From IMG/VR virus record IMGVR_UViG_3300036766_002181, positions 62,001-126,000 of that record: DNA of 64,000 nucleotides, one strand, 5' to 3'. Each line of letters begins with the position of its first letter. The stretch's first letter is position 1. This document shows, one piece after another, positions 3,415 to 38,080 of the stretch. Below the pieces are notes generated by a model, which ran no database searches, was not told the DNA's origin, and saw only the letters and a program-made list of their open reading frames with translations. The translations under genes and the position numbers were made by a program.

Positions 3415-4287
3415 TCAAAATTGCATATTTTCTAATTGCAACACAATTGGGCAATGAACAGAAATGTTCTCTTGCGCAAGCCTCGTTGTGTTTCCTAGCG
3501 AAATTCTTTTATTGTGATTTACAAACAAATCATTCAATTGATGTATGTCTGAAGTTTCTTCAAAACGATTATTAAATAAAACCTGAACTCGATTTGTTGG
3601 TATGTTGATTAGTTTACTTTCGCCCTCATAACAGGACATATAACCATAAAGCTTTCCCAGGGAAGCCTTCTTTGCATTTAAATGAACTTCAAACATGTTT
3701 GGATTTTGAAATGCTGGCAAACAAGAAATTATTGATTTTATAAAATCGGTATTATAGATATTACCATCCAAGGAAAATGGATAGCCCCAATCTCCTTCGC
3801 AACCTTGCCATTTCCATGTCAAATATTCCTGGTTGTCTCTCGGTGAAAGATCTGTTGGGAGCTTTGTGTCCGTGCTTAAGGCATAGCACTTTGTTATGCC
3901 TTTATATAGTCTCAAAGAAGCGGCCAACATGTGTATATTTTTATTAAGGGCCCTTTCAAATATAGAATCCTTTAATGAAAATTTTGATTTAAAAATAATA
4001 TCGTCAACAAGAAACATTGTGTATGGATTGGCGTCCAGAATAGAAGCTATGGTTGGCTGATTAAGAGGTAGGCCTGTCGCTCCTTGATTTATAAAGTTAA
4101 ATTCAGGATGAAGCTTCTTTACCTTTTCATAGCCCATTTGAAAATCTTTTTCAGAGGCCCTATAAATAACAGACAGGGACATTCCAGGAAGTTCTTTAAG
4201 ATCAATAAAATTCTCCTTAAAGGAACGCAGACATGCCTCAAGCTGCATTGGGCGGTTAAAGGAATAAGCTACTACATTAAGCGTCAT
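3415..4287 (-). CDS. Putative glycosyltransferase (GT-A-like)
   Basis: SFNRPMQLEACLRSF, FLVDDIIF, WGYPFSLDGNIY; lies inside a glycosyltransferase cluster. Confidence 0.55.
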   Translation of the reverse strand: MTLNVVAYSFNRPMQLEACLRSFKENFIDLKELPGMSLSVIYRASEKDFQMGYEKVKKLHPEFNFINQGATGLPLNQPTIASILDANPYTMFLVDDIIFKSKFSLKDSIFERALNKNIHMLAASLRLYKGITKCYALSTDTKLPTDLSPRDNQEYLTWKWQGCEGDWGYPFSLDGNIYNTDFIKSIISCLPAFQNPNMFEVHLNAKKASLGKLYGYMSCYEGESKLINIPTNRVQVLFNNRFEETSDIHQLNDLFVNHNKRISLGNTTRLAQENISVHCPIVLQLENMQF

Positions 4288-4568
4288 TGTGAAATTTTTA
4301 TAAACGTTGTTTTTAAACGATCATAATCAACAACAATTTCTCTGGATATTTTATCAGGCCTTGTCCATGGATCATTTAGGTATCCTGTCAAGAAAAGAAA
4401 AATTCCTATATTTTCGTCATAACTTTCTTTGCCATAAAGATATGGTCTTTCTTCTATGATTTCTTTGACATAAACTATTAATGGTTTATTCTCGGAGAGG
4501 TTATAGGTTTGCCACCTATAAAGTTCTCCGGGGACAAGATGATGATGATTGCTTTTTTCTTTTATCAC
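4284..4568 (-). CDS. Small PGxLY-family protein (SH3/KOW-like barrel inferred)
   Basis: LVPGELYRW motif; ATGA coupling to neighbours. Confidence 0.6.
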   Translation of the reverse strand: MIKEKSNHHHLVPGELYRWQTYNLSENKPLIVYVKEIIEERPYLYGKESYDENIGIFLFLTGYLNDPWTRPDKISREIVVDYDRLKTTFIKISQ

Positions 4569-4954
4569 TTTTTTACAAGCTTATATACCGGAGATTCCCG
4601 TATCCAGTGAATTCCGCCAACAATCTTATCAGTATTTATTTGTTTCATTTCTATATTATATTTTTCTACATCAATATCCTGCCCAAAGTATTTTGTCATA
4701 TTTTGTGGTTCCTTGTCTTTTGTAAGGACTATAACCACATTGTCTATCTTATATGGAGTTAAGATTTGTGTGGTATGTTCAGGTGCAAAAACCATATACC
4801 ATTGCATAAGCAGCAAAAACAATGTGCCAGAAATGCAAAAAAATGGTACAGCTTCGCTTTTTGGGCTAAATTTATCTGCCGCATATATTACAAGAGATAC
4901 AAAACCTATTATTCCTGTGATCGTTAAAAGTGTAAGAATTCCTGCTTCTGGCAT
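4565..4954 (-). CDS. Membrane protein, two predicted TM segments
   Basis: Hydrophobic stretches ILTLLTITGIIGFVSLVIYA and VPFFCISGTLFLLLMQWYMVFA. Confidence 0.6.
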   Translation of the reverse strand: MPEAGILTLLTITGIIGFVSLVIYAADKFSPKSEAVPFFCISGTLFLLLMQWYMVFAPEHTTQILTPYKIDNVVIVLTKDKEPQNMTKYFGQDIDVEKYNIEMKQINTDKIVGGIHWIRESPVYKLVKK

Positions 4955-4955
4955 A

Positions 4956-5330
4956 TTAGTTTCTCCTATTTTCTATTCTTTCAAATGGAAGCTTATCATT
5001 GTCGTCATAAAGACTATACGTTATTAACTTATTATTTATCAAAAAAGTTAAAACCATTTTTATTGAAATTGTGCTGTCTTGGCGTGGAAATAAAAAATTT
5101 TCAGATGAAGTTCGGCCAACAAACATTGTCGCTATCGTATATTTTTGTAGATTGCCTATGCCCGTGTATCGATAAAGTTCTCCTGGTATTAATAAATTAT
5201 CGACCCTCTGCTCAAGCAACTTCCTTTTGTTTTTTAATTTATTCTTCCACTGCCGCTTTTTTGCGACATAAATCAAACATGGAAAAGCAAGCGAGAACAA
5301 CACCCATAATGTCAACATTATAGGACTCAT
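4956..5330 (-). CDS. PGxLY-family protein with N-terminal TM anchor
   Basis: TM helix, basic coiled segment, then LIPGELYRY...TMFVG...FLINNKLI. Confidence 0.6.
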   Translation of the reverse strand: MSPIMLTLWVLFSLAFPCLIYVAKKRQWKNKLKNKRKLLEQRVDNLLIPGELYRYTGIGNLQKYTIATMFVGRTSSENFLFPRQDSTISIKMVLTFLINNKLITYSLYDDNDKLPFERIENRRN

Positions 5331-5713
5331 ATCTCGGCAGAGCCTTCTTCTTCTTCTTCTTCATAGCTTTTTATAAGTGCATGGTGGTCTTCGAAGAATA
5401 ATTCTTTTCTAACAATACCATCTTCATGCAGAAAAAAGGCTTCTATAAAGAGAAAATCCATATCTGGTTCGTCATGTTGGAATCTTCCGCAGCCTGGCTG
5501 TCTTTTGACAAATATCATATAATGATAATCCCGTTGAAGAATATTTCTTCTTTTGTATAATTCGCCAGGAATAAACTTTTTATCAATCCTATTTTCTAGA
5601 GCCAGCATTTTTGTTTTTAACTTTCTAAATTTTAAGAATTCAATAATTTTAATTGTTAAAGAAAAGCCAAGCAGGCCAAACAAAATTTGGTACAAGAAGA
5701 TTGCAGCCATCAC
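5327..5713 (-). CDS. PGxLY-family protein with N-terminal TM anchor
   Basis: TM helix, then LENRIDKKFIPGELYKR...MIFVK; paralogous to 4956-5330 (LEQRVDNLLIPGELY). Confidence 0.6.
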   Translation of the reverse strand: MMAAIFLYQILFGLLGFSLTIKIIEFLKFRKLKTKMLALENRIDKKFIPGELYKRRNILQRDYHYMIFVKRQPGCGRFQHDEPDMDFLFIEAFFLHEDGIVRKELFFEDHHALIKSYEEEEEEGSAEI

Positions 5714-6462
5714 TTGGCCTCTAACCAGGCACCATTTGTACTTGTATTTCTTCTATAAAAATAAAGCGGTTCTTTAAGCACAGATGTTTTCTGAAGCAAT
5801 AAAGTTAAGGAAGTATTATGAGCAGAATCTTCTGCTTTTTGGCTTCGCAAACCCATATTTCCGGGCATAAATTTTAACCCAAAATTCCAAAACTGTTTAT
5901 AAAATAGGGTGCTTGCTCCATGAACCTCATAGTTCTGACCAACATAATAATGATTTATTCCAGGAGTTTTGAATCCCTTATAAACCTGCCCAAGCACTTC
6001 TTCATGACCCATAACATCCTTGTCCTGTACGGGCCCAGAAGGCGTCCATAGAGAAGCCTTGTCAATGTCTTGTTGGCTATGGCAATGTACAAAACCACAG
6101 AGGTTATGATATGAGCCATTATCCTTCAAAACTTTTAGTTGTCTTTCTAATCTATATATACTGGATACATCGTCGGCATCAGCGACCGCTATCAAATCTG
6201 CTCTTGCCTTTTCTATGCCTGAGTTTAGGGCAAACCATTTTCCTCTGTTTTCCTTTAAAAGAATTGGTTGAGCTATTCTTGCATCTGCGCCAGAAATATT
6301 GTTAATAATCTCTGGGCTGTCATCAGTCGAGCAATCGTCAACAATGATTATTTCTATATTCTGAAGGGTCTGTTTTAAAATCGAATCAACGGCCTGTGTA
6401 ATATATTGAGCATGATTAAGGTTGGGTATAATAATGCTTATTTCAGGTTTCATAATGGTCAA
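5710..6462 (-). CDS. Glycosyltransferase family 2
   Basis: ISIIIPNLN, EIIIVDDCSTD, ALNSGIEKARADLIAVADADD, LYFYRR. Confidence 0.92.
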   Translation of the reverse strand: MTIMKPEISIIIPNLNHAQYITQAVDSILKQTLQNIEIIIVDDCSTDDSPEIINNISGADARIAQPILLKENRGKWFALNSGIEKARADLIAVADADDVSSIYRLERQLKVLKDNGSYHNLCGFVHCHSQQDIDKASLWTPSGPVQDKDVMGHEEVLGQVYKGFKTPGINHYYVGQNYEVHGASTLFYKQFWNFGLKFMPGNMGLRSQKAEDSAHNTSLTLLLQKTSVLKEPLYFYRRNTSTNGAWLEAK

Positions 6463-7104
6463 ACATTAGAATATCTAATTTTGGTATCCTTGTCAATGAA
6501 ATTTAAAACAAAAAAGAAGACTTTAAAATATGCGATAATCATATTTCTTTGTTTAAGCGCCATTATTCATTTTTGTATATTCTATTTTAAGATAATGCCA
6601 AAAGCAAACAATCAAAACAACAATATAACCATTTCTATTGAAGAAGAAAAAGAAACAGAAAAGCCATTAACGCCACAGATGCGGCCAAATATTAAGGTTC
6701 TTCCCAATCTGGTCGTTAAAGAAGAAAAACCTTTGCCCTCGCCAACTAAAACAGAAAAGATAACAAGGGGAGATACAGAAAAAAGGAAGACCACAAAGAA
6801 GAAAACAATGCCAATGCAAAAGCATGAGGCAATAGATACGGACAAGGTTTGTCCCTATAACTGGTATGGCGGAATAGGAATTGCAAAGCTTATCGGTCCT
6901 GATGGCTATACTTCGACCATAACAAGCATATTTGAAGGCTATGCTGCCGACAGAAGCGGCCTAAGAATTGGTGATATAATTCGCTATTATGATGATAGCG
7001 ACATTCGTGGAACTCCTGGCACTCCGCTTACTTTAACCATTGAAAGAAATGGCGGAATATTTAAGATAACCCTAATCAGGGTAAGGGTTTGTTATACCTT
7101 GTAA
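6406..7104 (+). CDS. Membrane-anchored PDZ-domain protein
   Basis: TM helix, Pro/Lys-rich linker, C-terminal YGGIGI...SIFEGYAADRSGLRIGDII...IRGTPGTPLTLTIERNG as in the Prc/CtpA PDZ; likely start MKFKTKK. Confidence 0.8.
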   Translation: MSMIKVGYNNAYFRFHNGQTLEYLILVSLSMKFKTKKKTLKYAIIIFLCLSAIIHFCIFYFKIMPKANNQNNNITISIEEEKETEKPLTPQMRPNIKVLPNLVVKEEKPLPSPTKTEKITRGDTEKRKTTKKKTMPMQKHEAIDTDKVCPYNWYGGIGIAKLIGPDGYTSTITSIFEGYAADRSGLRIGDIIRYYDDSDIRGTPGTPLTLTIERNGGIFKITLIRVRVCYTL

Positions 7105-7745: not shown

Positions 7746-7748
7746 AGA

Positions 7749-8747
7749 TTATTCCTTGTGTTTGTCGCACCAAGCTCTTGCCACTTCTGGAACTGGTCTG
7801 TTAATTGTAACTGCATTTTTTATGGTTTTGCCGTCATAAGCCGCATGAAAAATGTGGCCATTGGAAGCCTCTAGCCTTTTTGCCTCTTCCCTCATCTCTT
7901 GGTCTGTTACTTGATTCCACGGCTTGCTAAAAAATGGATAGCCGTCAGGGTGCGTATCTCCATATAGACTATCCCAAGATTTACTCCAAAATTTTTGAAA
8001 TTTCTTCATCTTCTCATAAATGCTCCACCAGGAAAGATGATAAATGGTTGGTAACTTGTTTATAACGCCATTTAACCATTGTTCATATTCTTTGGCATAA
8101 GAGATATCCGTCGTCGCCCTTTGCCGAAGCTGTTCAGTCTCTGGTTTCATAAAATTAACAAATGAAATCATTTGCCCTGTATTGCTATCAACAATCTCAC
8201 ACCCGTCACATCCATGTTTTGCATACAACAGCCCGCCTTCATATCTTCTAAGGCTTAATGGAATTCCATGTGTAATATGTGGAAGATTTTTGCTCAATCT
8301 CCATTTCCATGGATTAACATCGCAGCGAATCCTATTTGAATTATTCCATGGCTCAACGATGGGCAGGGCCATTACCGGGATGTTCTCGTCCAATTTTTTA
8401 CATAGACTTTCTATTTGCTCTCTACTAGTGGGCATTAATATCTCATCAATATCCTGGGGCCAAAGATAATCTCCCGTGCAACGAAGACGCGCCATGGCCT
8501 TCATTTTTCCATCATAAATTCCCCCATTTTGGGCTGACCAATTTGCATTGCCCCTTATGATCTTAAATTCTTTTTCACCAAATTCTTTCTTAAGTTCCTC
8601 AAGAACCTCAAGAGTGTTGTCTGTTCCGTCGCTTGTATCACAAACAACAATTTCATCAAAATAAGGAAATACAGACCTTATAGATTCCTTTATTGGGTAA
8701 TCCATAGAAACAGCATTTCGTGAGGTCGCATAGACGGAGATTTTCAT
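7749..8747 (-). CDS. Glycosyltransferase family 2
   Basis: DYPIKESIRSVFPYFDEIVVCDTSDGTDNT, GDYLWPQDIDE. Confidence 0.85.
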   Translation of the reverse strand: MKISVYATSRNAVSMDYPIKESIRSVFPYFDEIVVCDTSDGTDNTLEVLEELKKEFGEKEFKIIRGNANWSAQNGGIYDGKMKAMARLRCTGDYLWPQDIDEILMPTSREQIESLCKKLDENIPVMALPIVEPWNNSNRIRCDVNPWKWRLSKNLPHITHGIPLSLRRYEGGLLYAKHGCDGCEIVDSNTGQMISFVNFMKPETEQLRQRATTDISYAKEYEQWLNGVINKLPTIYHLSWWSIYEKMKKFQKFWSKSWDSLYGDTHPDGYPFFSKPWNQVTDQEMREEAKRLEASNGHIFHAAYDGKTIKNAVTINRPVPEVARAWCDKHKE

Positions 8748-8995
8748 TAAATTCTTTCTTTAATATAATCGACAAACCAATAATCTTGTGGTACATAGAT
8801 TATATTCTTATCGTATAAAAAGATAAGATATTCTTTATCACAAGTAAGATACATCAGTGTAGAAGTGGTCGTGATTATTGGATCTATCATTGGCTGCCAT
8901 CCTTCAGAATTGGCCTTATCAATTCTTGCTTTTGTTGTATATAAAAGGAGGTTAGATGTTTTATACAAATTTCCTGGTATAAACTTAAAAATCAT
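8747..8995 (-). CDS. Small PGxLY-family protein
   Basis: FIPGNLYK...LMYL...IFLYDKNII. Confidence 0.65.
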   Translation of the reverse strand: MIFKFIPGNLYKTSNLLLYTTKARIDKANSEGWQPMIDPIITTTSTLMYLTCDKEYLIFLYDKNIIYVPQDYWFVDYIKERI

Positions 8996-9279
8996 TTTTC
9001 TTGCATTTCATTCAAAACCATCGCATATCTTTCACTGGCCATAAACAGAAAGAAAACCAATCTGCCATTCCATAAGAAAATGGGATCAATATGGTGTTGA
9101 TCAAATGCGTGTTCCCTAACAAACATTAAACAGGTGCCGTTCTTTAAAACGGATCTTCCAGGCAGTAGTGAAGATCCTGAATTATGCCCAACATAATAAG
9201 ATTCTTCGAATGGAATTACAAAATTATTTATCTCGCCCGTGATGTGGTAACAATATAGATTCCCTGGCTTAAAAATCAT
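8992..9279 (-). CDS. Small PGxLY-family protein
   Basis: FKPGNLYC...LMFV...IFLWNGRLV. Confidence 0.65.
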   Translation of the reverse strand: MIFKPGNLYCYHITGEINNFVIPFEESYYVGHNSGSSLLPGRSVLKNGTCLMFVREHAFDQHHIDPIFLWNGRLVFFLFMASERYAMVLNEMQEK

Positions 9280-9572
9280 AAAGAAGAATCATCCTCTTGT
9301 ATTTCTTTGAATTGTGCCTGAAAGTGTGCGACTTGGGCCAGATGTAAATTTGGGAAATAAACCAACTTTCCATTGTGAATAAAAAGATACAGGGCCGGAA
9401 GGACACTTACTAGGTTTTTTTCACTAGTTATAAACATCAAAATCTCAAAGATCTTGCCCGCTTCGTTTAAACGAATATATTCGTTTTGATTCCTTGGCTC
9501 CTGAGCCTGACGAACATAATATATTTGTCCATAAAATCTGTAAAGAGATCCCGGCTTAAAAGTTAATGTCAT
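9276..9572 (-). CDS. Small PGxLY-family protein
   Basis: FKPGSLYR...LMFI...LFIHNGKLV. Confidence 0.65.
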   Translation of the reverse strand: MTLTFKPGSLYRFYGQIYYVRQAQEPRNQNEYIRLNEAGKIFEILMFITSEKNLVSVLPALYLFIHNGKLVYFPNLHLAQVAHFQAQFKEIQEDDSSL

Positions 9573-9591
9573 AATAACGGCAATAAGTTTA

Positions 9592-9834
9592 TTATGAAAT
9601 CAAAGAAAAATCAAGATAGGAAAAAGAGAAAATAGTAATAATCTCATTTTCATAAAGAAACCTAGGATAGGTTTCGTATTTGCTAACTTCTGAATTAATA
9701 TACATTAATTGTCTGTTCTCAGGAACAGGAAACCCAAGGCGTTTACGCTTTTCAGAAAAACAAAAGCGCAATATGTTTTTTGTTTCATATAATTCTCCCG
9801 GAATAAACATGTTTGAATTTGCTATATTCTCCAC
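9592..9834 (-). CDS. Small PGxLY-family protein
   Basis: FIPGELYE...LMYI...RFLYENEII. Confidence 0.65.
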   Translation of the reverse strand: MENIANSNMFIPGELYETKNILRFCFSEKRKRLGFPVPENRQLMYINSEVSKYETYPRFLYENEIITIFSFSYLDFSLIS

Positions 9835-9950: not shown

Positions 9951-10940
9951 CTATGTGCAGAACTTTGTTCCCCTGTACGGACAAAAGGGTTCACAGGCCA
10001 TCCTGTTTTTAAAGACAAATCCCTTTCTAACCTGGTTTAACATGCTCTCAACCGTATTAAGGGCACGTTCTACTGCCTTTGGGCCGACCGAAATAGGAAC
10101 AAGCTCAAATCGATCCAAAGGCCTTCTTTGTTTTGCAGGAATTCTCTTCATAAGAACAAAGGCACACTTGGCATCCTTGAGATCAAGGTTCATAAGCTTA
10201 CAAAAATAATGCTTATAAAGAATCAATTGCATTTGGGTTTTAAAATCTCTTTTCTTATTTGCTGGCCAGCCCCAGCTACAAGTTTTTAAATCGATAATAT
10301 AATAGTCATATTCCACGGGTGGGAGCCTACCCTCTTTTTCGCATTGAAGCAGGAGTTTTTTTGTTGGCTCCCTTCTAACCTTGATAATTGTGTCTAGGAA
10401 GCCCTTAAACTTTATGTTGGTTTGTTTTTCAATAGACTCAAATAGGGGATATTCAGTAGCAACAAGTTGCCACCTTGTTCCAAAGGCTTCAAGAAGCCAG
10501 GGTTCAATTTGATTTAATGAATCTTCAATGGCACTTACAAACTCTGGTATTTTGTCCTTAATCTTCTCTAGCTGTTCCTCGTTTAGACTAGACTTTAGCA
10601 TGACGCAAAACTCATTTTCCACATCCTTTGCCTTTGGCAATATCTTTGTTTGAAGATAATTTTCCATTGCCGAGTGCATAATTTTTCCATAAACACTGAA
10701 GATGTTTGAATCAGGTACAGGTGGAGGGATTTTATCTATGTGTTTAAGCTTGTGTCTGTATCTACAATCAATCCAATCAGAAACCTCAGAAAATGAAATA
10801 TGATACTTTCCCGTTGGAAGAATTGTAGGATCCTTAAAAAGAGGAAGCTGAACCCTTCTTCCTTCTTCTGTTGTTGGATTTCTTTTTGTTTCTGCTACTG
10901 CTGCTATTTTTTGTTCTTGCTTGGGAAACGGATATTTCAA
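9951..10940 (-). CDS. Cas4/RecB-like PD-(D/E)xK exonuclease with Fe-S cysteines
   Basis: ISFSEVSDWIDCRY, GKIMHSAME, KGFLD, IIDLKT, QLILY, C-terminal CEPFCPYRGTKFC. Confidence 0.85.
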   Translation of the reverse strand: MKYPFPKQEQKIAAVAETKRNPTTEEGRRVQLPLFKDPTILPTGKYHISFSEVSDWIDCRYRHKLKHIDKIPPPVPDSNIFSVYGKIMHSAMENYLQTKILPKAKDVENEFCVMLKSSLNEEQLEKIKDKIPEFVSAIEDSLNQIEPWLLEAFGTRWQLVATEYPLFESIEKQTNIKFKGFLDTIIKVRREPTKKLLLQCEKEGRLPPVEYDYYIIDLKTCSWGWPANKKRDFKTQMQLILYKHYFCKLMNLDLKDAKCAFVLMKRIPAKQRRPLDRFELVPISVGPKAVERALNTVESMLNQVRKGFVFKNRMACEPFCPYRGTKFCT

Positions 10941-10945: not shown

Positions 10946-12001
10946 TTATTTGTTAAACCTCACCCCAAATCTGCACTTGTCATGAAACTCTCTTAAGTTT
11001 CTTGCTCCAACATAGGAAAAAGAACTCCTTATTCCACCGGCAATATCTTCGATAACCTTACTAACTGGCCCTGTTGGTTCAAGAATCTCGCTTTTTCCTT
11101 CTGGCGTTGGCATTTGTTTGTCATTCCTGTATGTTTCTTGAACATCCTTAGAGGCCGAGCCTCTATAGGTTCTTCCTTGTGGAGCCTCGTTACAGGCGGC
11201 CAATAATCTTCCGGTCATAATAAAATCTGCACCAGCGCCGAGGCTTTTACAAATGTCTCCAATCTCAACAAACCCGCCATCGGCAACTATTGAAACATTT
11301 CTGTTGGCAACATGTTCTGACATAAGTCTTGCCTGCCTAAGCCCCTCGACTCCCTTAAGAACAGACTCTAGATTTGGAACCGTTACTCCTGTTACGTTTT
11401 TAGTTTGACAAACGCTTCCTTGGGCAATATTAATCTTTACTGCGTCTGCTCCCCAAAGTGCCAAATCCCTTGCCCCTTCCGGCGTTGCAATATTGCCAGC
11501 GACAACATAAACATTAAAGGTGTTCTTAAGGTATTGAATCATTTGTTTCATATGAAGACTGTGACCATGGGCGATATCAATAACAAAGTATCTTGCTCCT
11601 GCGTCATAAAGGGCCTTGGCTCTTTCGTGAGAATCCCTATTTACACCCACCGAAACAAGACTTGGCAACCTGGCAAAACGTTCATTTTCAGATAATTGTG
11701 TTTTTCTAAATTCATTAACATTGTCTGATATTGACATAAATCGATGAAGAGCCCCAATTGCTCCTGCCTTCTTGAGGGCGAGACACATATTTCCATCTGT
11801 GACAGATTCCATGTTTGCAGAAATAACAGGGACAGGAATTTCTATTTGTCCCAGCTTAGAAGAAATATCTAATTCCTTTCTTGATGAAACATCTGAATAG
11901 TTTGGTATGATAAAAACGTCTGAATAGGATATAGAGCTATCGTATTCAGGACGAATTTTAGGATCTATTACGGTCATACTATTCCTTCTATATTGTTCCA
12001 A
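10946..12001 (-). CDS. IMP dehydrogenase / GMP reductase family protein (no CBS domains)
   Basis: SYSDVFIIP, PVISANMESVT, DIAHGHS, AGNIAT, GSVCQT catalytic Cys, VADGG, KSLGAGAD, YRGSAS, PEG, GGIRSSFSYVGA. Confidence 0.9.
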   Translation of the reverse strand: MEQYRRNSMTVIDPKIRPEYDSSISYSDVFIIPNYSDVSSRKELDISSKLGQIEIPVPVISANMESVTDGNMCLALKKAGAIGALHRFMSISDNVNEFRKTQLSENERFARLPSLVSVGVNRDSHERAKALYDAGARYFVIDIAHGHSLHMKQMIQYLKNTFNVYVVAGNIATPEGARDLALWGADAVKINIAQGSVCQTKNVTGVTVPNLESVLKGVEGLRQARLMSEHVANRNVSIVADGGFVEIGDICKSLGAGADFIMTGRLLAACNEAPQGRTYRGSASKDVQETYRNDKQMPTPEGKSEILEPTGPVSKVIEDIAGGIRSSFSYVGARNLREFHDKCRFGVRFNK

Positions 12002-12906
12002 AAAAAGCTTGGTCGAGATCTAAGATAGGCCATAGTCTCTTTAATGTCTCCATTTTTAAACCAGTCTTCATCCTTGTGTTGAACATTTTCGTTTAAGTCA
12101 AGCTCAAGGCCAAGAAGCTTTGCTTCAATTGTGATTCTTGGTGCTGTATCCTTATCTCTAGGAAAAAATACTAGACCCTTAAATTTAGAAAGACTTATAA
12201 GGAAGTCTTCTGGTTTTAAGCCACCACCAACCACCTCATAAAGAAGATTATTTTTTTTGCAATACTCTTCTGTTTCTTGTTGATTTTTTATCCATGAACC
12301 GCCGCCTAAAACTAACCATTTTCCATTATGACCATTCTTAAGTCTTTCCTGATAAAGCCCTTCAAGTTGATCAAGAGTTTTATCATCAAAGGTAGAGCCC
12401 TGAACAATTAATTTGTTTTTTGGCCAATTGTTCATCTCGGGAAAAAGTCGAAGATATTCATTAAGCTGTCCTTGGGACATAAAGAAAACATGCTCTGCGC
12501 GCTCATAGAAGCCCTTTATAAGCTTACCAGGTTTTTCTAGGTGACAGGCACACTCCTTGCCAGTATTAAGTTTGTGAAGTCCACTGGAGCGAAAAATGCA
12601 TGCCTTAAAATCACATTCAATTACTGAGTATTTTAAACCGCTTGTAGCAACCTCTATTAATATGTCTTGAGTCAGGGCACAAAAGTTTCCAAAGATCCAA
12701 TAGATGCCATGCTCTTTTGATTGTTGTATTAAGTCTCTATATGAGTTAAAAATTTGAGAAGATCTAATCTTAAAAACCCTCTCTGGGCACTTGTTTAAAA
12801 TTGCATCCAGCGTAAGCTCTGCGCCTCCCACTAGATCAGAAGAAAAAAAATCAGCCACTCCAACAAACCTAGTGTTTGTTGGAATATAATATATTGGCAT
12901 ATTCAT
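11974..12906 (-). CDS. Putative GT-B (GT4-like) glycosyltransferase
   Basis: GGAELT N-terminal motif, VFFMSQGQL, DTAPRITIEAKLLG. Confidence 0.6.
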   Translation of the reverse strand: MNMPIYYIPTNTRFVGVADFFSSDLVGGAELTLDAILNKCPERVFKIRSSQIFNSYRDLIQQSKEHGIYWIFGNFCALTQDILIEVATSGLKYSVIECDFKACIFRSSGLHKLNTGKECACHLEKPGKLIKGFYERAEHVFFMSQGQLNEYLRLFPEMNNWPKNKLIVQGSTFDDKTLDQLEGLYQERLKNGHNGKWLVLGGGSWIKNQQETEEYCKKNNLLYEVVGGGLKPEDFLISLSKFKGLVFFPRDKDTAPRITIEAKLLGLELDLNENVQHKDEDWFKNGDIKETMAYLRSRPSFFWNNIEGIV

Positions 12907-12962: not shown

Positions 12963-13211
12963 TTATATTTTATAAAGTTCAAATAGATCTGAAAATTCAA
13001 AATTAAAGAATGCTCTTTTTACAAGGCCATATCCACAACAAAAAAAGTAGGCCTCAGAAACACCAAGCACACGCTCGCCATCGACAAATCTAATTGGCAT
13101 AACAATGGTATTTCTTAGGATTTCGACCGATTGTTTCTGATAGTGAAACCAAAAGCTAAGATTTGATCTTGTTCTATATAGACTTCCGAGGAGCAGAGGA
13201 TGATTATTCAT
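12963..13211 (-). CDS. Small PGxLY-family protein
   Basis: LLGSLYR...IVMPIRF. Confidence 0.55.
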   Translation of the reverse strand: MNNHPLLLGSLYRTRSNLSFWFHYQKQSVEILRNTIVMPIRFVDGERVLGVSEAYFFCCGYGLVKRAFFNFEFSDLFELYKI

Positions 13212-13431
13212 GGACTATTTTTTCAAAACAATTTGCGAGTTCTTCTTTTGTAAATCTCCATGAAACAATTTTATTATTGCACCATAGTTCATAATACATG
13301 AATACGCCATACGTGAATACGCCCTGCTTGAAACGAACAGGCATTATAACGGTATTCAAAGAGAGATTGTGATAACTGCAAAAATTATCTGTTTCCCTTA
13401 TCCGATATAGTTCGCCAAGTACAAGAATCAC
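13204..13431 (-). CDS. Small PGxLY-family protein
   Basis: VLGELYR...VIMPVRF...NNKIV. Confidence 0.55.
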   Translation of the reverse strand: MILVLGELYRIRETDNFCSYHNLSLNTVIMPVRFKQGVFTYGVFMYYELWCNNKIVSWRFTKEELANCFEKIVHE

Positions 13432-13649
13432 AAGGCTTCGTCAACTTTTTTAAAATGATTTTTTAACTGCTGGCGATTGAAAGCGGAACTATAAACTTGA
13501 CCAAAAACAAGAAAAGTTACCACAATGATCTTATAGCGGACAACTTCTTTCTTTATGAAAACCAAAACAGTGTTTTTCTTAAATTCGGCATTATCTTGAG
13601 CAGACCAAAATGGATTTTTAACAAGATAAAGACTACCGGGAACCAGCAT
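13428..13649 (-). CDS. Small PGxLY-family protein
   Basis: VPGSLYL...VLVFIK...FLVFGQV. Confidence 0.55.
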   Translation of the reverse strand: MLVPGSLYLVKNPFWSAQDNAEFKKNTVLVFIKKEVVRYKIIVVTFLVFGQVYSSAFNRQQLKNHFKKVDEAL

Positions 13650-32212: not shown

Positions 32213-32796
32213 TATTTTCCAAGAAGCATTCTTACCTGAAGATTCACAAGAGTCTTGCGCAAAACATTATTCCTAATAAAGCCCTGAACAATTGAATTTA
32301 AAACATGTGGCAAGCCTGGATCTGCTCGAAGTCCAAGAAAAACCCTTGTTCCCTTTTCTTGCTGATATTCTGATAGGGCAATCTTCCCTTCAAAAACAGG
32401 AACATTTCCTGATAATTTTCTTATTTCAATATCTACTGTTTTTTTATCAAAGCCCGTTCTTTTATTTACCTGAACCCGCATCCAAAGAATATCTTGGTAA
32501 ACCTTGGTTTCAAGATAACATTCACTTTTAGACAGTCCCACAGAACGATATATGTGCGGAAAAAGTTTATTATAGGATTTACAATCTCCAAGAATATCTG
32601 AAACCTCTTGAACAGAATGCCCTGAAATTGTAATTTCATCCTGTTCCCAGGCAGGAAATGGCCTCTCATCTATTGCCGGCTGTTGTTGCTGGGCCCAAAC
32701 AACTGCCGAGCACATCAAACAACAAGCAACGCCCATAATAAGAGACTTAAAATCGACCATATCGAGTGTCTTCAATGTCATAACCAAGGGCAACAA
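32209..32796 (-). CDS. Exported SRPBCC/START-like domain protein
   Basis: Signal-like N-terminus (MGVACCLMCSAVVWAQ); VQEVSDILGDCKSYNKLFPHI resembles SRPBCC helix 1; ADPGLP. Confidence 0.55.
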   Translation of the reverse strand: MLPLVMTLKTLDMVDFKSLIMGVACCLMCSAVVWAQQQQPAIDERPFPAWEQDEITISGHSVQEVSDILGDCKSYNKLFPHIYRSVGLSKSECYLETKVYQDILWMRVQVNKRTGFDKKTVDIEIRKLSGNVPVFEGKIALSEYQQEKGTRVFLGLRADPGLPHVLNSIVQGFIRNNVLRKTLVNLQVRMLLGKY

Positions 32797-33043
32797 GTCT
32801 GGTTGGCTTGGCGTCTCCCGGAAACAGGTATTCTACTTCGCCATAGGCACTGATCTGTGTATCAGATTTTTTATAAAGCCTTCCTGGAATTTGTTTGTCT
32901 AGTTTAGAAGACTGAAGAGAGCCATCTTCATTTATGAACTGAAGATAGTGAAGATAAAATTCTTTATAAAGTCCATTTGGTAGGCGGCGAAAAACCCGCT
33001 CAATGGAGGTATTCATTCTTGTTGCACTTCTGCCCGTAATCAT
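32747..33043 (-). CDS. Hypothetical protein
   Basis: 98-aa ORF containing IPGRLYK, a possible distant PGxLY member. Confidence 0.45.
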   Translation of the reverse strand: MITGRSATRMNTSIERVFRRLPNGLYKEFYLHYLQFINEDGSLQSSKLDKQIPGRLYKKSDTQISAYGEVEYLFPGDAKPTRLVALGYDIEDTRYGRF

Positions 33044-33841: not shown

Positions 33842-34600
33842 TTAACTCTTAGCGCCAGCTCTATTAATTTGGCAGAGAATTTCTTGTTTAACAAATTCTC
33901 TTATTAACCTATTTTTTGTTGCTCTTTGCCTTTGTTCCTCTTTAAGATCTTCCAATGGAATATCGGTTATTGTATTTCCCATAAGATCGATTATCTTAAA
34001 GTTGCCTCTCTTGTCTTTTAAGACATTTCTCTGGTGTATGTCGATTAACTCAACCCCAATCTTATTGAGATATTTGGCCGTATTATAACACATTACCAGC
34101 ATTGGAAGATCATTCCTGGAAAAAATATGATGATTGTCTTTTCTTACTCTATAAATCACATCCTTAAGATTTAATAAATGGCCCTCAAAAAAAGTTTGAT
34201 CAGAAACCCTTTCAAAAAAGGCAAACTCTTCCTTGGATAGGGGATATAGCCTTTCTTGAATAATGACATAAAGTTCCAACTCCCAGGTATCATGTTCGTC
34301 TCTTGGCTTGGGATTCTGTACAGTAATCCTTGGAAGTTTATAAACACCATAAATGTTTGATATGTGTTTAAGCTTCTTTCCTTTAAGTCTGGCACTGACT
34401 CTGGCTTCAGACCTGTCTGTTGTAAGCTTAACCACATGACCAGATTTTGTAAGATATGCCTCTCCAAAGGCTCCCTTGCCAAGTTGCTGCAAATCAAATT
34501 TAGAGGTCGGGGTTAGACCAAGTTTGTTTGCCAGACTTGGGTGATGCTCAATTAGGGCATCCTTAAAAAATGTTTCTTTTTCAAACGTGCTCATTGACAA
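33842..34600 (-). CDS. Ser/Thr protein kinase-like protein
   Basis: LGKGAFGEAY, VVKLT, IIQERL, DIHQRN catalytic loop, IIDL. Confidence 0.88.
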   Translation of the reverse strand: MSMSTFEKETFFKDALIEHHPSLANKLGLTPTSKFDLQQLGKGAFGEAYLTKSGHVVKLTTDRSEARVSARLKGKKLKHISNIYGVYKLPRITVQNPKPRDEHDTWELELYVIIQERLYPLSKEEFAFFERVSDQTFFEGHLLNLKDVIYRVRKDNHHIFSRNDLPMLVMCYNTAKYLNKIGVELIDIHQRNVLKDKRGNFKIIDLMGNTITDIPLEDLKEEQRQRATKNRLIREFVKQEILCQINRAGAKS

Positions 34601-34607: not shown

Positions 34608-36008
34608 TTATTTCTTTTTATTGCTGCTGGCGAGCTTAATGTTTCTTATGGCTCCCCTTGCCAGCTTGTCTTGGGTTGGTACTGTTTCGTCGTCAAAGGT
34701 TTGTGAATTAACATTAGATCTAACCCAAATATAGGCCATTTGATCAAGTTTAATATCTCCTATAGAAATAACCTCTTTTTGATATCCATATTCATCAGCA
34801 ATTTCTGATTTGCCAAGAATGTCTGGATTTAATAAGAAGTCATTTCCTCCACCATGAATTTTGGCCCTCATTACAACGAAAAACTTATTTCCCTTGCTAT
34901 ACAGCAACGTTCCCCAATCCTCTTTTATTTTCTTAATAATGGCAGGATTGACTGTCCAGGAAAAGTGATCTCTGGATTGATGGCCTGCAAAAAAATTTCC
35001 ACCTACTTGGGATCTCCATTTTCCATCCTTTTCTTTTTGTCCGTCAATTGCCTTTTTATTGCCACCCAACATTTGTTGAAGAATTTTTGGATCTACCTCC
35101 ATAAATCTATAGGCATACTGATATCTTTGAGGAACCTCTAAAACTTTTTCATATTTTCCTGCATTCTTAAGTTGATCTAGTTTTTTAATCCAAGGATTTA
35201 ATGCTGATGGACTACCGTGGTAATGAACATTCATGGCATTTTTTAAATCTATTTCTTTTCTGGTATTTGGTTCTTTTGGCTTTGGCGTATCTTTTCTTTC
35301 TGGTGCAAATAAATATTGGCCAAAGACTTCATCCTTAGATGCTTCTGGCGCTTCTGATAATAACAATGTTAACTTTATAAGTTCTTCCCTGATCAGGTCT
35401 ACTAATAGCTGCTCATTTTTTATTTTTGGTATTTTTGATTTTTTTGATGAAAAGCCACGAAGATCAATTATTTTTATATTTCCATCTTTATCTTTAAGAA
35501 CATTTTCGCCGTGAACATCTGATAGATAAATTCCCATTTTTAGTAGGTCATTTGACAGTTCTAGACACATGTTTAATAATGGCAAGTCTTCTTTTACAAA
35601 GCCATCGTCTCCTTCCTCATTTTGTTTTGCTACTTCAATTTCATTTTCCAGACCATTGGTAGTAAGCGTTCCCTCAAAAACTTCATGCAGCTTCCAGAAG
35701 AACTCTTGTTCGTGGGCCGACAAGGGATACAATCTTTCTTGTATGATTGCAAACCAATCCTTCATATAGGGAATCTCTGGCAATCTATATACTTCCAAAA
35801 TATTTGCTATATGCTTTATTTTTTTTCCCTTAAGTCTTGCACTAACCGCAACCTCTTTAGTATCTGTTGTAAGCTTAAGAACGTGACCTGATTCTAACTG
35901 GTAGGCATAACCCCAGGCCCCGCCTCCAAGCTCAAGAGAATGCTCTGTTAGACCAAGCTTCTTGGCAACCTTTGGATAAGATTCAATCAGGTCTTCTTTG
36001 AGAGTCAT
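34608..36008 (-). CDS. Protein kinase fused to an R-S-E clade ADP-ribosyltransferase-like domain
   Basis: Kinase: LGGGAWGYAY, VLKLT, DVHGEN, IIDL. C-terminal domain: YAYRFM, FSWT, YQKEVI. Confidence 0.78.
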   Translation of the reverse strand: MTLKEDLIESYPKVAKKLGLTEHSLELGGGAWGYAYQLESGHVLKLTTDTKEVAVSARLKGKKIKHIANILEVYRLPEIPYMKDWFAIIQERLYPLSAHEQEFFWKLHEVFEGTLTTNGLENEIEVAKQNEEGDDGFVKEDLPLLNMCLELSNDLLKMGIYLSDVHGENVLKDKDGNIKIIDLRGFSSKKSKIPKIKNEQLLVDLIREELIKLTLLLSEAPEASKDEVFGQYLFAPERKDTPKPKEPNTRKEIDLKNAMNVHYHGSPSALNPWIKKLDQLKNAGKYEKVLEVPQRYQYAYRFMEVDPKILQQMLGGNKKAIDGQKEKDGKWRSQVGGNFFAGHQSRDHFSWTVNPAIIKKIKEDWGTLLYSKGNKFFVVMRAKIHGGGNDFLLNPDILGKSEIADEYGYQKEVISIGDIKLDQMAYIWVRSNVNSQTFDDETVPTQDKLARGAIRNIKLASSNKKK

Positions 36009-36018
36009 TGGCCAACCC

Positions 36019-36909
36019 TCAAAATAGGTTCTTTACAAAGTCAAGAACTCTTTCAAAGAAGCCGGCTTTCTTTTTCTTTTTTGATGGCAATGGCTTGCCC
36101 GATTCAGAGTCAACAGTTGTCCATACCTCTGATTGCAATCCCCAATCCTCATAGGGAAAATAGGTGTAACCATTATCGGCATATCTTTTGCCCCAAGAGT
36201 TTCTAACAATAAATCCTCCCTTGTCTTTTAGATACCCAACAATGCAAGTTGCATGGTAGCCGAGAAGAGCCTGCTTGTCATTTGCCTGTTTCCACATTCT
36301 TGGTCCATAGTTGTACACGGGAATTGTAAGCAGACAGGGACCATTTTTTACAAGAGCCTTCTTTAGGGCATCTATGCTCTTAACAACAGCATAACCCTGA
36401 ACCCTATATTCTGATGCCTCTTTTTTAAGGGCCTCTGTAATTGGTAGGGTTGTAAGATAGGGATAGTCTTTTTCTGGAACAGAGCCTACCTTTGTTAGGA
36501 TTCTCATCACATCTCTTGGATACATTCCCTCACCCTTTGTAGATCTACTATTATAGATAAACTGGGGGCTCATATAGTCCAAGAAATGAACATCCCTTCT
36601 TTCCTGCCATTCCTTCATTGCGGCAGAGGACATTCCAAAGCAACAACCTTGCTTTCCCTGATCTCTTATGGGAAGAAGCTCTGGTCTATAATCAAGATTG
36701 TCTGGAAGGTCATTTAGATTAATGGCCTGATAAATTGTTTCTGCCTCGTGATCTCTTGGATCGTGTGGACTCCTTTGTACTCTATCCAAACGAACATCCA
36801 GTGCCTCTGTTACCTTTCCACCAGAAGGAGGGGAAACAACAGTAGCAGGATAGATGGTCGTGATTGTTGATGATGGTGATGATTTTTTTGATTTTGATTT
36901 TTTGGCCAT
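36019..36909 (-). CDS. Papain-like (C1) cysteine peptidase
   Basis: LPDNLDYR, IRDQGKQGCC (Q, C), SPQFIY, YHATCIVGY (H), VRNSWG (N). Confidence 0.92.
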   Translation of the reverse strand: MAKKSKSKKSSPSSTITTIYPATVVSPPSGGKVTEALDVRLDRVQRSPHDPRDHEAETIYQAINLNDLPDNLDYRPELLPIRDQGKQGCCFGMSSAAMKEWQERRDVHFLDYMSPQFIYNSRSTKGEGMYPRDVMRILTKVGSVPEKDYPYLTTLPITEALKKEASEYRVQGYAVVKSIDALKKALVKNGPCLLTIPVYNYGPRMWKQANDKQALLGYHATCIVGYLKDKGGFIVRNSWGKRYADNGYTYFPYEDWGLQSEVWTTVDSESGKPLPSKKKKKAGFFERVLDFVKNLF

Positions 36910-36921
36910 ATTGTGATATCC

Positions 36922-36929
36922 TTAAATAT
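36922..36929 (-). promoter_or_regulatory. Putative late promoter ATATTTAA upstream of the peptidase-kinase operon
   Basis: Same GCCATATTTAA context as upstream of the tail fibre gene (26727-26737); one of 11 (A/C)TA(T/C/G)TTA(A/T) sites before late genes. Confidence 0.55.
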
Positions 36930-36956
36930 GGCTTTTCCTATATAAAGCCAATGACT

Positions 36957-37439
36957 TTATTGAGCAATAAGAACTATATTTTCAAGAACTTCTTTTTGGG
37001 AATAGGTAACCCATCTTTTTCCATCAGGCCCCACAAAAACAAGACCATTAAGAAGGTGCCGTCTTTTGCATTCTTTTGCATTGTAACACTTGCCAACATA
37101 CATTAGAATTGTGCCGGTCATGAATATCCCAATATTCATTGTTAGATTGCCTCCTCCTATGTTTGATGCTCCGGTGTTGCAGATGGTTATGTTGTTGTGA
37201 ATATGGCTTGGGTTTCTTATGATCTGATCAACGTCTGTAGGGGGCCAGGAAGAAAATATCAATATTCCATCCAACAATGAAATGTTTGACGATGATGGGG
37301 CATATGGATTAACGATAACAAGAGGAGGATTGCGGGGCAGCCGGTTCTTGTATCTTTGTGATTCTATAAAGACTTCCTGGAATAAGTTCCTTATTCTTGT
37401 TGTTTTCTTTTCTTTTTTGTGACCGGCCTCATATAACAA
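36957..37439 (-). CDS. Hypothetical protein, possible extended PGxLY-family member
   Basis: TILMYVGK...FVGPDG motif shared with the neighbours. Confidence 0.5.
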   Translation of the reverse strand: MLYEAGHKKEKKTTRIRNLFQEVFIESQRYKNRLPRNPPLVIVNPYAPSSSNISLLDGILIFSSWPPTDVDQIIRNPSHIHNNITICNTGASNIGGGNLTMNIGIFMTGTILMYVGKCYNAKECKRRHLLNGLVFVGPDGKRWVTYSQKEVLENIVLIAQ

Positions 37440-37441
37440 TA

Positions 37442-37748
37442 TTAGGTTATTTTAATCAAAAAGTCTTTTTCAATATCAGATTCATGTGTTCCATAGGATC
37501 TCTTTGTTCCAAAGTCATAAAATGTTTTATATGAAAACGGTTCTTCAATAGTCTTATCAGCGGGGCCTTCACCAAGATACATCAAGAGAGTGGCTGCTCC
37601 CTCATGGGTTGGCAGGGTAAAGTAACGAGAACCATTTACTATCAATACCGCCTTCATCTTTTCTGTTTTCTCTTATAAAGAATTCACAAACATGCCAGGC
37701 CACGGGCTTGGTCTTTATTCTTAATCGATATAAGTCTCCTGGGATCAT
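37442..37748 (-). pseudogene. Frameshifted PGxLY-family gene (ORF1 37602-37748, ORF2 37442-37657)
   Basis: ORF1 MIPGDLYR...EGGIDS and ORF2 TLLMYLG...FYD...GTHE together align with the intact neighbour 37745-38080. Confidence 0.6.
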
Positions 37749-38080
37749 ATTAATTTCTTAAAAAACAAAGATATAAAATTATCTTCATGTGTTCCAATCC
37801 ACTGGCTTGCTTGTGGTTCATAAAACAATATACCATCTGGAACTTCTTCTGAATGGCCCATATACATCAGGGTTGTGCCGGCCTTTACGGTATAGCCCTC
37901 TAGATCTGCACGACAATCTATAAACCCTCCTTCAGAAGCGCATATATCTTCCAGACTTGCATCTGACTTAAATCGCCAAAAAGAATAATACCTTGTTTTT
38001 CTTCTTCCCTTTAAAGAAAATAAATCGCCTTCCTTTAAAAATAAAACAGATTTTTTATTTACTTTTTTCTTTTTTATCAT
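37745..38080 (-). CDS. PGxLY-family protein
   Basis: KEGDLF...EGGFID...TLMYMG...FYE...GTHE. Confidence 0.6.
   Translation of the reverse strand: MIKKKKVNKKSVLFLKEGDLFSLKGRRKTRYYSFWRFKSDASLEDICASEGGFIDCRADLEGYTVKAGTTLMYMGHSEEVPDGILFYEPQASQWIGTHEDNFISLFFKKLI

What the first reader, a model, noticed from the sequence alone, without database searches (positions are those of the whole stretch)
4284..38080. Lineage-specific expansion of at least 12 small PG(E/N/S/D)LY genes in four clusters
Members lie at 4284, 4956, 5327, 8747, 8992, 9276, 9592, 12963, 13204, 13428, 37442-37748 and 37745, and possibly 36957 and 32747. They share x-PG-[ENSD]-LY, then a central [LIV]-M-[YF]-[LIV] strand, and often F-L-x-(N/D)-x-K-[LI]-V; this pattern suggests a small SH3/KOW-like barrel. 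Two members have N-terminal TM anchors. Loops between the conserved strands are highly divergent. This looks like an accordion family of diversified binders, such as anti-defence proteins or host-protein decoys, interleaved with the glycosyltransferases.
Basis: partly seen in the sequence, partly recalled or inferred. Interest (0 to 1): 0.6.

Follow-up and report, generated by a model that had tools for sequence, protein, structure and literature searches.

The report
Expanded small beta-barrel family in huge phage
A partly assembled huge bacteriophage from sediment spends about 8% of its DNA on some 55-60 very divergent copies of one unannotated small protein (13 in this window); the protein is predicted to be an SH3-like beta-barrel with variable loops, and what it binds or does is unknown.

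Summary
The window is bases 62001-126000 of a 244,715-bp IMG/VR virus record, a myophage that CheckV rates 57% complete. PG.LY occurs 44 times in its open frames against 2.1 expected.

A profile built only from metagenomic relatives finds 54 frames in this genome. With the motif masked, 33 of 43 copies still rank in the top 1% of frames. This is therefore a true protein family, not a convergent turn.

In the window:
- 10 copies are intact, two of them membrane-anchored.
- 2 copies are broken by frameshifts (36957-37428 and 37442-37748).
- 1 copy is borderline (37745).
- 32747 is not supported.

AlphaFold (pLDDT 79) gives a small SH3-like barrel with a C-terminal helix. The conserved blocks are the core strands and the loops vary 17-54 and 5-37 residues. 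Nothing matches in Pfam, PHROGs, NCBIfam, PADLOC or PDB sequences.

About 82 small relatives exist in metagenomes, often in tandem arrays. One related phage contig has at least 16 copies, while 15 other relatives have 0-5.

The paralogues are old: the best pair is 49% identical. This is a diverged array, not a recent accordion. A role as diversified cytoplasmic binders, possibly against host defence, is inferred and not shown.

The parts
4284..4568 (-). Probable divergent member (94 aa, PGELY at residues 13-17). It overlaps the downstream ORF 3415-4287 by 4 nt.
   Evidence: Combined HMM gives E 3.6e-4, but this copy was in the seed. The external-only HMM does not reach 0.01. With the motif masked and this copy left out, it ranks 40 of about 3300.
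4956..5330 (-). Member with an N-terminal TM anchor (124 aa). The motif is at residues 49-53.
   Evidence: External-only HMM gives E 9e-5. Hydropathy is 2.26. The AF2 model has a helix at 3-44 followed by strands.
5327..5713 (-). Member with an N-terminal TM anchor (127-128 aa) and a poly-Glu tail. It overlaps the GT2 gene 5710-6462 by 4 nt.
   Evidence: External-only HMM gives E 2e-3. Its best hit is its neighbour 4956, at 36% identity. Hydropathy is 1.97.
8747..8995 (-). Member (82 aa), the last gene of a four-gene array that runs into the GT2 gene 7749-8747.
   Evidence: External-only HMM gives E 1e-8. The genome search gives E 8.6e-10.
8992..9279 (-). Member (95 aa).
   Evidence: External-only HMM gives E 1.6e-7. 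With the motif masked and this copy left out, it ranks 1 at E 3.5e-5.
9276..9572 (-). Member (98 aa) and the best-scoring copy. This is the protein that was modelled.
   Evidence: External-only HMM gives E 6e-14. AF2 gives pLDDT 79.4 and pTM 0.70. Fold searches are.
9592..9834 (-). Member (72-80 aa). The likely start is the ATG at 9810.
   Evidence: External-only HMM gives E 3.8e-13.
12963..13211 (-). Member of the LG.LY sub-type (82 aa).
   Evidence: External-only HMM gives E 1.8e-6. Its best hit is its neighbour 13204, at 33% identity.
13204..13431 (-). Member of the LG.LY sub-type (75 aa, GTG start).
   Evidence: External-only HMM gives E 9.7e-6.
13428..13649 (-). Member (73 aa), directly downstream of the AlaDH/PNT gene 13653-14801.
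   Evidence: External-only HMM gives E 3.7e-10. The motif-masked leave-one-out test gives E 9e-6.
36957..37428 (-). Broken copy. PGSLY lies in the frame 37312-37428, which has no start codon. The LMY and VFV-G-x-x-GK strands lie in the 160-aa frame 36957-37439. An A-rich tract sits at the 5' end.
   Evidence: Sequence is. The N-terminal fragment scores E 2.9e-5. Read through with X, it scores E 3.7e-6 over HMM positions 24-90.
37442..37748 (-). Broken copy. The 48-aa frame from the ATG at 37748 holds MIPGDLY, and the 71-aa frame 37442-37657 holds the LLMYLG strand. One frame shift lies near 37655-37700.
   Evidence: Evidence is. Read through with X, it scores E 6.4e-4 over HMM positions 25-83. 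An independent Logan contig from the only run that holds this stretch (probably the source sample) is identical, with no indels.
37745..38080 (-). Borderline divergent member (111 aa), with EGDLF, TLMYMG and ILFYE blocks.
   Evidence: Combined HMM gives E 0.05 over HMM positions 14-81. It is not found by the external-only HMM.

Best explanation
Shown:
- The window carries 10 intact copies, 2 frameshift-broken copies and 1 borderline copy of an unannotated phage protein family of about 72-125 aa.
- Four blocks define the family: [LF][IVK]-P-G-x-L-Y-[RK] close to the N-terminus; [GND]-x-[IV][LV][ML][FY][ILV]; F-L-x-x-[GN]-x-h-[VI]; and a C-terminal F-[EK]-[EK]-[IV].
- The whole 245-kb record is an incomplete huge myophage from a sediment metagenome. 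It holds 55-61 such frames, about 19 kb or 7.8% of its DNA. Most lie in tightly packed, co-directional arrays, and many genes overlap by 4 nt.
- Related phage contigs carry the same family in arrays.

Predicted:
- Each copy is a single small SH3-like beta-barrel closed by a C-terminal helix.
- The conserved blocks are the core strands. The two stretches between them vary in length (17-54 and 5-37 residues) and in sequence.

Inferred:
- The family grew by repeated tandem duplication, followed by deep divergence and occasional decay.
- The copies act inside the infected cell as a repertoire of binding modules on one scaffold, each with different loops and surface charge.
- Two copies are tethered to the cytoplasmic face of the membrane. 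This follows from the Lys/Arg-rich segment directly after their TM helix.
- The most likely ligands are host proteins, in host take-over or counter-defence. Nothing here shows what they bind.
For: Family is real:
- PG.LY occurs 44 times against 2.1 expected.
- With the motif masked and each copy left out, 13 of 43 reach E<0.01 and 33 of 43 rank in the top 1%.
- A profile made only of external proteins finds 54 frames here at E<0.01.
- The genome search finds 45 matches.
- Synonymous codons vary at the motif.

Fold:
- AF2 gives pLDDT 79.4 and pTM 0.70, with six strands and one helix.
- The best structural match is 3g1j, at Z 6.6 with 75 residues aligned and rmsd 2.9. SH3, Tudor, KOW, Mfd-RID and NdhS domains follow at Z 4-5.
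- The Foldseek list is dominated by SH3 domains.

Variable loops and conserved core.

Charge is not uniform. pI runs from 4.7 to 10.1, with 18 acidic and 27 basic copies.

Tandem origin:
- 18 of 57 copies have the adjacent gene as their best hit, and 27 have it within 5 kb.
- 11 junctions overlap by 4 nt.

Decay: broken copies, confirmed by a second assembler.

Distribution in the clade:
- The array next to dCMP deaminase is syntenic between this genome and L007.
- L089 holds at least 16 copies.
- 15 relatives hold 0-5 copies.

Non-structural context: the arrays lie among GT2, IMPDH-like, AlaDH, nuclease, ligase, amidoligase and HD genes.
Against: - There is no functional evidence at all: no expression data, no known relative and no ligand.
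- Structural matches are weak (Foldseek E >= 0.03, Z < 8), so 'SH3-like' is a fold-level description and not proven homology.
- The second model (TM-anchored copy) is poorly confident in residues 60-90. Its fold search was swamped by the helix.
- Both models share most of their alignment, so they are not independent tests of a shared fold.
- The invariant G-x-L-Y could itself be a functional site common to all copies. That would argue for one shared partner rather than many.
- Copy counts in relatives come from incomplete records.
Confidence: 0.55

Rival explanations
1. The motif is a generic beta-turn that arose many times, and the ORFs are unrelated.
For: The bare motif does recur by convergence. 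The profile's top library hits include long FN3-repeat and T9SS proteins that match only at the 11 positions around the motif, which reads PGNLY or PGQLY there.
Against: The motif-masked leave-one-out test, the external-only profile and three further conserved blocks in register all show common descent of the small proteins.
Confidence: 0.02
2. It is a recent genomic accordion: copies were amplified lately under acute selection, as with poxvirus K3L, and are now collapsing.
For: Tandem arrays, broken copies and very different copy numbers among relatives.
Against: No near-identical copies exist. The best pair is 49% identical and the next are 43% and 39%. One array position is syntenic with a phage whose core genes are only about 60% identical. 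So much of the expansion is old, or divergence is extremely fast.
Confidence: 0.1
3. The copies are small nucleic-acid-binding or transcription/translation factors, in the manner of Sm/Hfq, KOW, Tudor or CarD-RID barrels. They would tune phage or host gene expression.
For: The same small-barrel fold class includes Hfq, KOW, Mfd/CarD RID and ribosomal proteins, at Z 3.8-5.0. One external copy is fused to a zinc ribbon.
Against: pI ranges from 4.7 to 10.1, with 18 acidic copies. There is no conserved basic patch in the profile, because the conserved columns are hydrophobic core. No Pfam KOW, LSM or CarD match was found.
Confidence: 0.12
4. The copies are virion-associated, as packaged or ejected internal proteins or as capsid or tail decoration, and are diversified like T4 internal proteins.
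For: Cluster 4 (36957-38080) lies about 1 kb from the tail tube gene. Huge phages package many small proteins (general knowledge).
Against: Most copies lie among metabolic and DNA-handling genes, far from the structural module. No propeptide or known targeting sequence was recognised. Two copies are membrane-anchored.
Confidence: 0.08
5. The frames are not translated, and the repeat is a DNA-level element.
For: SD-like motifs precede only 12 of 59 copies.
Against: Conservation is at the amino-acid level, with free synonymous variation at the motif. The frames are long and open, and their starts and stops are coupled. Low SD use fits SD-poor hosts, not non-coding DNA.
Confidence: 0.01

Closest known systems
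VCH_CASS4, Vibrio cholerae integron cassette protein (PDB 3g1j)
   Same: It is the best structural match to the model, at Z 6.6 with 75 of 87 residues aligned and rmsd 2.9, and is first in Foldseek at E 0.06. It is also a small mobile-element protein of unknown function.
   Different: There is no sequence relation. The profile search of PDB sequences gave nothing better than E 0.4, and 3g1j was not among those hits. Its function is also unknown (PMC3548836), so the match adds no mechanism.
SH3-like small beta-barrels (SH3, Tudor, KOW, Mfd/CarD RID, NdhS/PsaE, FeoA)
   Same: The strand order and size are similar. A conserved aromatic-containing motif sits at the start of strand 1 and is followed by a long variable loop, which recalls the ALYDY motif and RT loop of SH3 (general knowledge). 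Many SH3 chains fill the Foldseek list.
   Different: Scores are weak (E 0.2-0.6, Z 4-5). No Pfam SH3, KOW or Tudor model matches any of 91 members. The family also has an extra C-terminal helix.
DUF3601 (PF12208)
   Same: The ESM Atlas structure search gives TM 0.61/0.64, and the feature search gives 0.79.
   Different: The PF12208 HMM finds nothing in the six frames of this genome even at E 10.
Multigene families of large DNA viruses (poxvirus accordions; ankyrin, BTB and MORN families of giant viruses)
   Same: One scaffold is copied many times in tandem, with diversified surfaces, decaying copies and copy number that varies between relatives.
   Different: This is a phage, the scaffold is different and unannotated, and the copies are old (49% identity or less), with no sign of recent amplification. 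The comparison rests on general knowledge and was not tested here.
Arrays of polymorphic-toxin immunity genes (for example SUKH and Imm families)
   Same: Tandem arrays of small, highly diverged single-domain paralogues that each bind a different protein partner (general knowledge).
   Different: No toxin genes are adjacent. No NCBIfam, Pfam or PADLOC match was found. The context is a lytic-type huge phage.

Membership tests
SH3 / KOW / Tudor Pfam families | A significant match to a curated sequence model of the family. | tested here: not met
   In hmmscan of 10 window members and of all 91 rows of A2 at E <= 1, no SH3, KOW, Tudor or LSM family recurs. Every family listed is hit by a single member only.
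SH3-like small beta-barrel fold | A five- or six-stranded closed barrel of about 60-80 residues that superposes on solved SH3-like domains. | tested here: inconclusive
   The model has pLDDT 79. SH3, Tudor and KOW chains align at Z 4-5 with rmsd 2.4-3.7 over 50-65 residues. Foldseek probabilities reach 0.8-1.0, but E is 0.06-0.6. The tool notes that Z under 8 can mean only a common arrangement.
DUF3601 (PF12208) | A match to the PF12208 HMM above 22.3 bits. | tested here: not met
   There are no matches in G000 at E <= 10, and the family is not listed in the Pfam scans.
VCH_CASS4-like proteins (3g1j) | Sequence similarity to the 3g1j chain. | tested here: not met
   A profile of A2 against all PDB sequences gives a best E of 0.42, and 3g1j is absent from the hits. 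The resemblance is structural only, at Z 6.6.
Known phage protein families (PHROGs) | A match to a PHROG profile. | tested here: not met
   At E <= 0.01, 3 PHROGs are each hit by 1 of 91 members, and none recurs. The 10 window members give nothing below E 0.07.
Defence or anti-defence proteins | A match to a curated defence or anti-defence model, or a demonstrated inhibition of a defence system. | not testable with these tools
   PADLOC, which covers defence systems only, gives 0 of 33 members matched. No anti-defence library or assay was available.
Genomic accordion (recent amplification) | Near-identical tandem copies. | tested here: not met
   The highest paralogue identity is 49%, and the next are 43% and 39%.

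The most novel reading that the evidence does not exclude
This clade of huge phages keeps a germline-encoded repertoire of dozens of loop-diversified mini-barrels. These would serve as a binder library against variable host proteins such as defence sensors, toxins or surface-biogenesis enzymes. With about 60 members it would be among the largest paralogous families seen in any phage genome, and it would be a new scaffold class for counter-defence.
Probability: 0.2. Interest if true: 0.85.

Novelty: new variant of a known kind. Interest (0 to 1): 0.6.

Why it matters
Phage genomes are compact, so spending about 8% of 245 kb on one small scaffold implies strong and sustained selection. The family has no annotation in any library searched, yet it recurs in arrays in related uncultured huge phages. 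It therefore marks a sizeable unexplored piece of huge-phage biology.

If the copies are diversified binders, they offer two things:
- a natural panel for finding host targets or defence systems of an uncultured host;
- a compact, evolvable protein scaffold.

If they share one partner, the invariant G-x-L-Y motif points to a conserved interaction worth finding.

Tried and rejected
- Single-sequence phmmer and jackhmmer among the candidates linked only three neighbour pairs and did not propagate. Motif-anchored alignment and profiles were needed.
- The word-index protein search found only this genome's own copies and one outsider with A1. With A2 it found only 7 proteins, six of them external, and added little to the exhaustive search.
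Relatives were reached through the tail tube instead.
- Pfam, PHROGs, NCBIfam, PADLOC and PDB sequence searches gave no recurring hit.
- The DUF3601 lead from the Atlas did not hold up against the Pfam HMM.
- BFVD and Atlas shape searches gave only weak matches to uncharacterised proteins.
- The fold search of the TM-anchored model was dominated by its long helix and says nothing about its barrel.
- dN/dS on loops was not attempted. The closest paralogues are 49% identical or less, so synonymous sites are saturated.
- Three literature searches were made. Two found no description of such a family. The third found only the structural-genomics paper on 3g1j.
- Only one public run holds the stretch, and it is probably the source sample. 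There is therefore no RNA evidence and no independent sample.
- 32747-33043 and 4565-4954 were considered as members and rejected.
- Complex prediction was not used, because there is no candidate partner.
Full report
**What the window is.** The window is bases 62001-126000 of a single 244,715-bp contig with 38.9% G+C. The genome search identifies it as an IMG/VR virus record that is linear and that CheckV rates 57% complete.

It encodes a contractile-tail phage:
- The tail tube gene lies at 39184-39675. It is about 44% identical to those of Microcystis phage Mel-JY01 and the Flavobacterium 'immuto' phages.
- Two tail-sheath paralogues lie at 43646-49727.

The only public run that holds the stretch is a sediment metagenome, which is probably the source sample. 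This is therefore an incomplete genome of an uncultured huge phage.

**Checking the observation.**
- Genome-wide, PG.LY occurs 44 times in stop-to-stop frames against 2.1 expected from composition.
- At the motif, all four Pro codons, all four Gly codons and all six Leu codons are used. The conservation is therefore in the protein and not in the DNA.

Single-sequence searches link only neighbour pairs, so I aligned 43 motif-bearing frames. Three tests followed.
1. Leave-one-out profiles were built with the motif and its flanks removed. With these, 13 of 43 copies reach E<0.01, and 33 of 43 rank within the top 1% of about 3300 frames. The rest of the protein therefore carries family signal of its own.
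2. An exhaustive profile search of 1.84 billion cluster representatives returned 116 hits at E<=1e-3, which break down as follows:
   - 26 are this genome's own proteins.
   - About 82 are external small proteins of 72-123 aa, matched end to end.
   - Three are two-domain fusions.
   - Five are long repeat proteins matched mainly at the motif. Of the four scanned, two are FN3 repeat proteins, one carries galactose-binding-like repeats with a T9SS sorting domain, and one has no Pfam hit. So the bare motif does recur by convergence elsewhere.
3. A profile built only from the 82 external proteins finds 54 frames in this genome at E<0.01.

The combined profile finds 55 frames at E<1e-3 and 61 at E<1e-2. 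The tool's own genome search gives 45 matches. The family is real.

Across 139 sequences the conserved columns are as follows:
- [LF][IKV]-P-G-x-L-Y-[RK], in which G is invariant, L is kept in 138 of 139 and Y in 132 of 139.
- An aromatic residue about 8 positions later.
- [GND]-x-[IV][LV][ML][FY][ILV].
- F-L (126 and 111 of about 138), followed by [GN]-x-x-[VI].
- A C-terminal F-[EK]-[EK]-[IV].

**Members in the window.**
- Solid members are 4956, 5327, 8747, 8992, 9276, 9592, 12963, 13204 and 13428.
- 4284 is probable. It scores E 3.6e-4 with a profile that included it, and it ranks 40th when masked.
- 37442-37748 and 36957-37428 are broken copies. In each, the motif lies in one frame and the later strands lie in another. 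Read through with X at the break, they score E 6.4e-4 and 3.7e-6 across both halves.
- A Logan contig assembled independently from the holding run is identical over 36000-38500 at depth 13. The breaks are therefore not an artefact of one assembler, although the data are probably the same sample.
- 37745 is borderline, at E 0.05.
- 32747 matches only at the motif and is rejected.
- 4565-4954 is an unrelated TM protein.

**Anatomy and context.** From 14801 down to 3415, the minus strand is one tight gene train. In transcription order it reads:
- AlaDH/PNT
- three family members
- a 310-aa ORF
- an IMPDH/GMP-reductase-like gene
- a PD-(D/E)XK nuclease
- four family members
- GT2
- two small ORFs
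- GT2
- two TM-anchored members
- a TM protein
- one family member
- a 290-aa ORF

Eleven junctions between family genes genome-wide overlap by exactly 4 nt.

Genome-wide, the 61 frames total about 19 kb, or 7.8% of the record. The main array runs from 206.3 to 217.0 kb with about 25 copies. Further arrays lie at 3.6-4.4, 12.7-13.4, 181.3-182.1, 186.5-187.1, 194.6-197.1 and 219.6-220.8 kb. They sit among DNA ligase, AAA ATPase, two amidoligases, an HD domain protein and an exonuclease. This is the non-structural part of the genome.

The members 4956 and 5327 each have a hydrophobic N-terminal segment followed by a Lys/Arg-rich stretch. By the positive-inside rule this places the barrel in the cytoplasm, which is an inference.

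**Structure.** AlphaFold2 on the 9276-9572 protein with 33 paralogues gave the following:
- pLDDT is 79.4 and pTM is 0.70.
- Strands lie at 10-13, 19-21, 31-33, 43-51, 60-66 and 69-76.
- A helix lies at 78-86, and a short strand at 88-90.

The conserved blocks map to strands 1, 4, 5 and 6 and to the helix. The low-confidence, length-variable parts are the stretch between strands 1 and 4 and the turn between strands 4 and 5 (17-54 and 5-37 residues between the motif anchors).

Fold searches gave only modest matches:
- VIA-align against 48,161 chains puts 3g1j (integron cassette protein VCH_CASS4) first, at Z 6.6. Mfd RID, myosin and RecD2 SH3, TraI, NdhS, Tudor, KOW and FeoA follow at Z 4-5.
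- Foldseek lists 3g1j first and then dozens of SH3 domains, at E 0.06-0.6.
- BFVD and the Atlas give only weak matches to uncharacterised proteins.

It is not established homology.

The TM-anchored copy modelled as a long helix followed by the same order of strands. Its middle was poorly confident, and its fold search was uninformative.

**Known families.** No recurring match was found in Pfam, PHROGs, NCBIfam, PADLOC or PDB sequences. The DUF3601 lead from the Atlas fails against the Pfam model.

**Evolution.**
- 18 of 57 copies have the adjacent gene as their best hit, and 27 have their best hit within 5 kb. This fits tandem duplication.
- The best pair is only 49% identical, and most pairs are 20-35%.
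- 22 copies are closest, though weakly, to external proteins.
- A phage contig from another sample (L007) shares core genes at 44-62% identity. It has a six-copy array next to its dCMP deaminase, the same place as copies 12738-13366 of this genome.
- An 80-kb contig from that sample (L089) ends in at least 16 copies within 5.3 kb, and one of them is fused to a zinc ribbon.
- Short contigs L006 and L008 hold four and at least five copies.
- By contrast, 15 IMG/VR records whose tail tubes are 68-79% identical hold 0, 2, 0, 5, 1 and then ten times 0 matches. Together they total about 2.4 Mb, and all are incomplete.

The family is therefore old in this phage group. Its copy number swings widely, and this genome is the extreme seen so far. 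'Lineage-specific expansion' is fair. 'Accordion', in the sense of recent amplification, is not.

**Mechanism.** The following are shown: the family, its arrays, the broken copies, the conserved-core and variable-loop pattern, and the mixed charge (pI 4.7-10.1). The barrel fold is predicted.

The following are inferred:
- The copies are cytoplasmic single-domain binders with different specificities. They are most plausibly aimed at host proteins during take-over or counter-defence.
- The mixed charge argues against a uniform nucleic-acid-binding role.
- The genomic position argues against a virion role.
- The invariant G-x-L-Y could instead mark one partner shared by all copies. I cannot exclude this.

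I put about 0.9 on 'one homologous family with a small-barrel fold'. I put about 0.3 on the diversified host-protein-binder role. The single figure of 0.55 given for the best explanation blends the two.

- Read laying was given 2501 letters.
- The broken genes were read through only with X at the break.
- No alternative genetic code was used.

Noticed in passing
window 43646-46624(-) and 46677-49727(-): Two adjacent large tail-sheath paralogues (992 and 1016 aa) both match PHROG 23 in their C-terminal parts.
   Followed up: no
window 33842-34600(-) and 34608-36008(-): Two adjacent paralogous ORFs share a roughly 70-residue N-terminal region. By eye they carry kinase-like glycine-loop and HxxN motifs. 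Neither has a Pfam hit.
   Followed up: no
window 36019-36909(-): A papain-family (C1) cysteine peptidase in a phage, at E 9e-18. It lies next to the broken family copies.
   Followed up: no
window 39750-40847(+) and 53560-54645(-): GIY-YIG/NUMOD homing endonucleases lie inside the tail module.
   Followed up: no
window 10946-12001(-), 13653-14801(-), 9951-10940(-): An IMPDH/GMP-reductase-like gene, an AlaDH/PNT-like gene and a PD-(D/E)XK nuclease are co-transcribed with the family arrays.
   Followed up: no
window 6406-7104(+): This is the only plus-strand ORF inside the minus-strand gene train. By eye it has an N-terminal TM segment and a PDZ-like C-terminus. It has no Pfam hit.
   Followed up: no
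whole genome (family gene starts): Only 12 of 59 family genes have an SD-like motif upstream. This would fit an SD-poor host such as Bacteroidota or cyanobacteria. The host is unknown.
   Followed up: partly
L089:6583-11836 (ENA ERZ925377, 80-kb contig): A related phage contig ends in at least 16 family copies, and one (9340-9753) is fused to an N-terminal zinc ribbon. The contig end cuts the array.
   Followed up: partly
genome 218128-219303, 228441-230117, 215351-215914 (L004, L005): Two Amidoligase_2 proteins and an HD_4 protein are interspersed with the largest arrays.
   Followed up: no
window 5327-5713, 38082-38999; genome 209158-209865: Several ORFs in or near the arrays contain poly-Glu runs of 6-8 or more residues.
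   Followed up: no
genome 195955-196219, 196454-196799, 186200-186548, 212611-212966: Outside the window, further family copies appear split between two frames. They were not examined base by base.
   Followed up: partly
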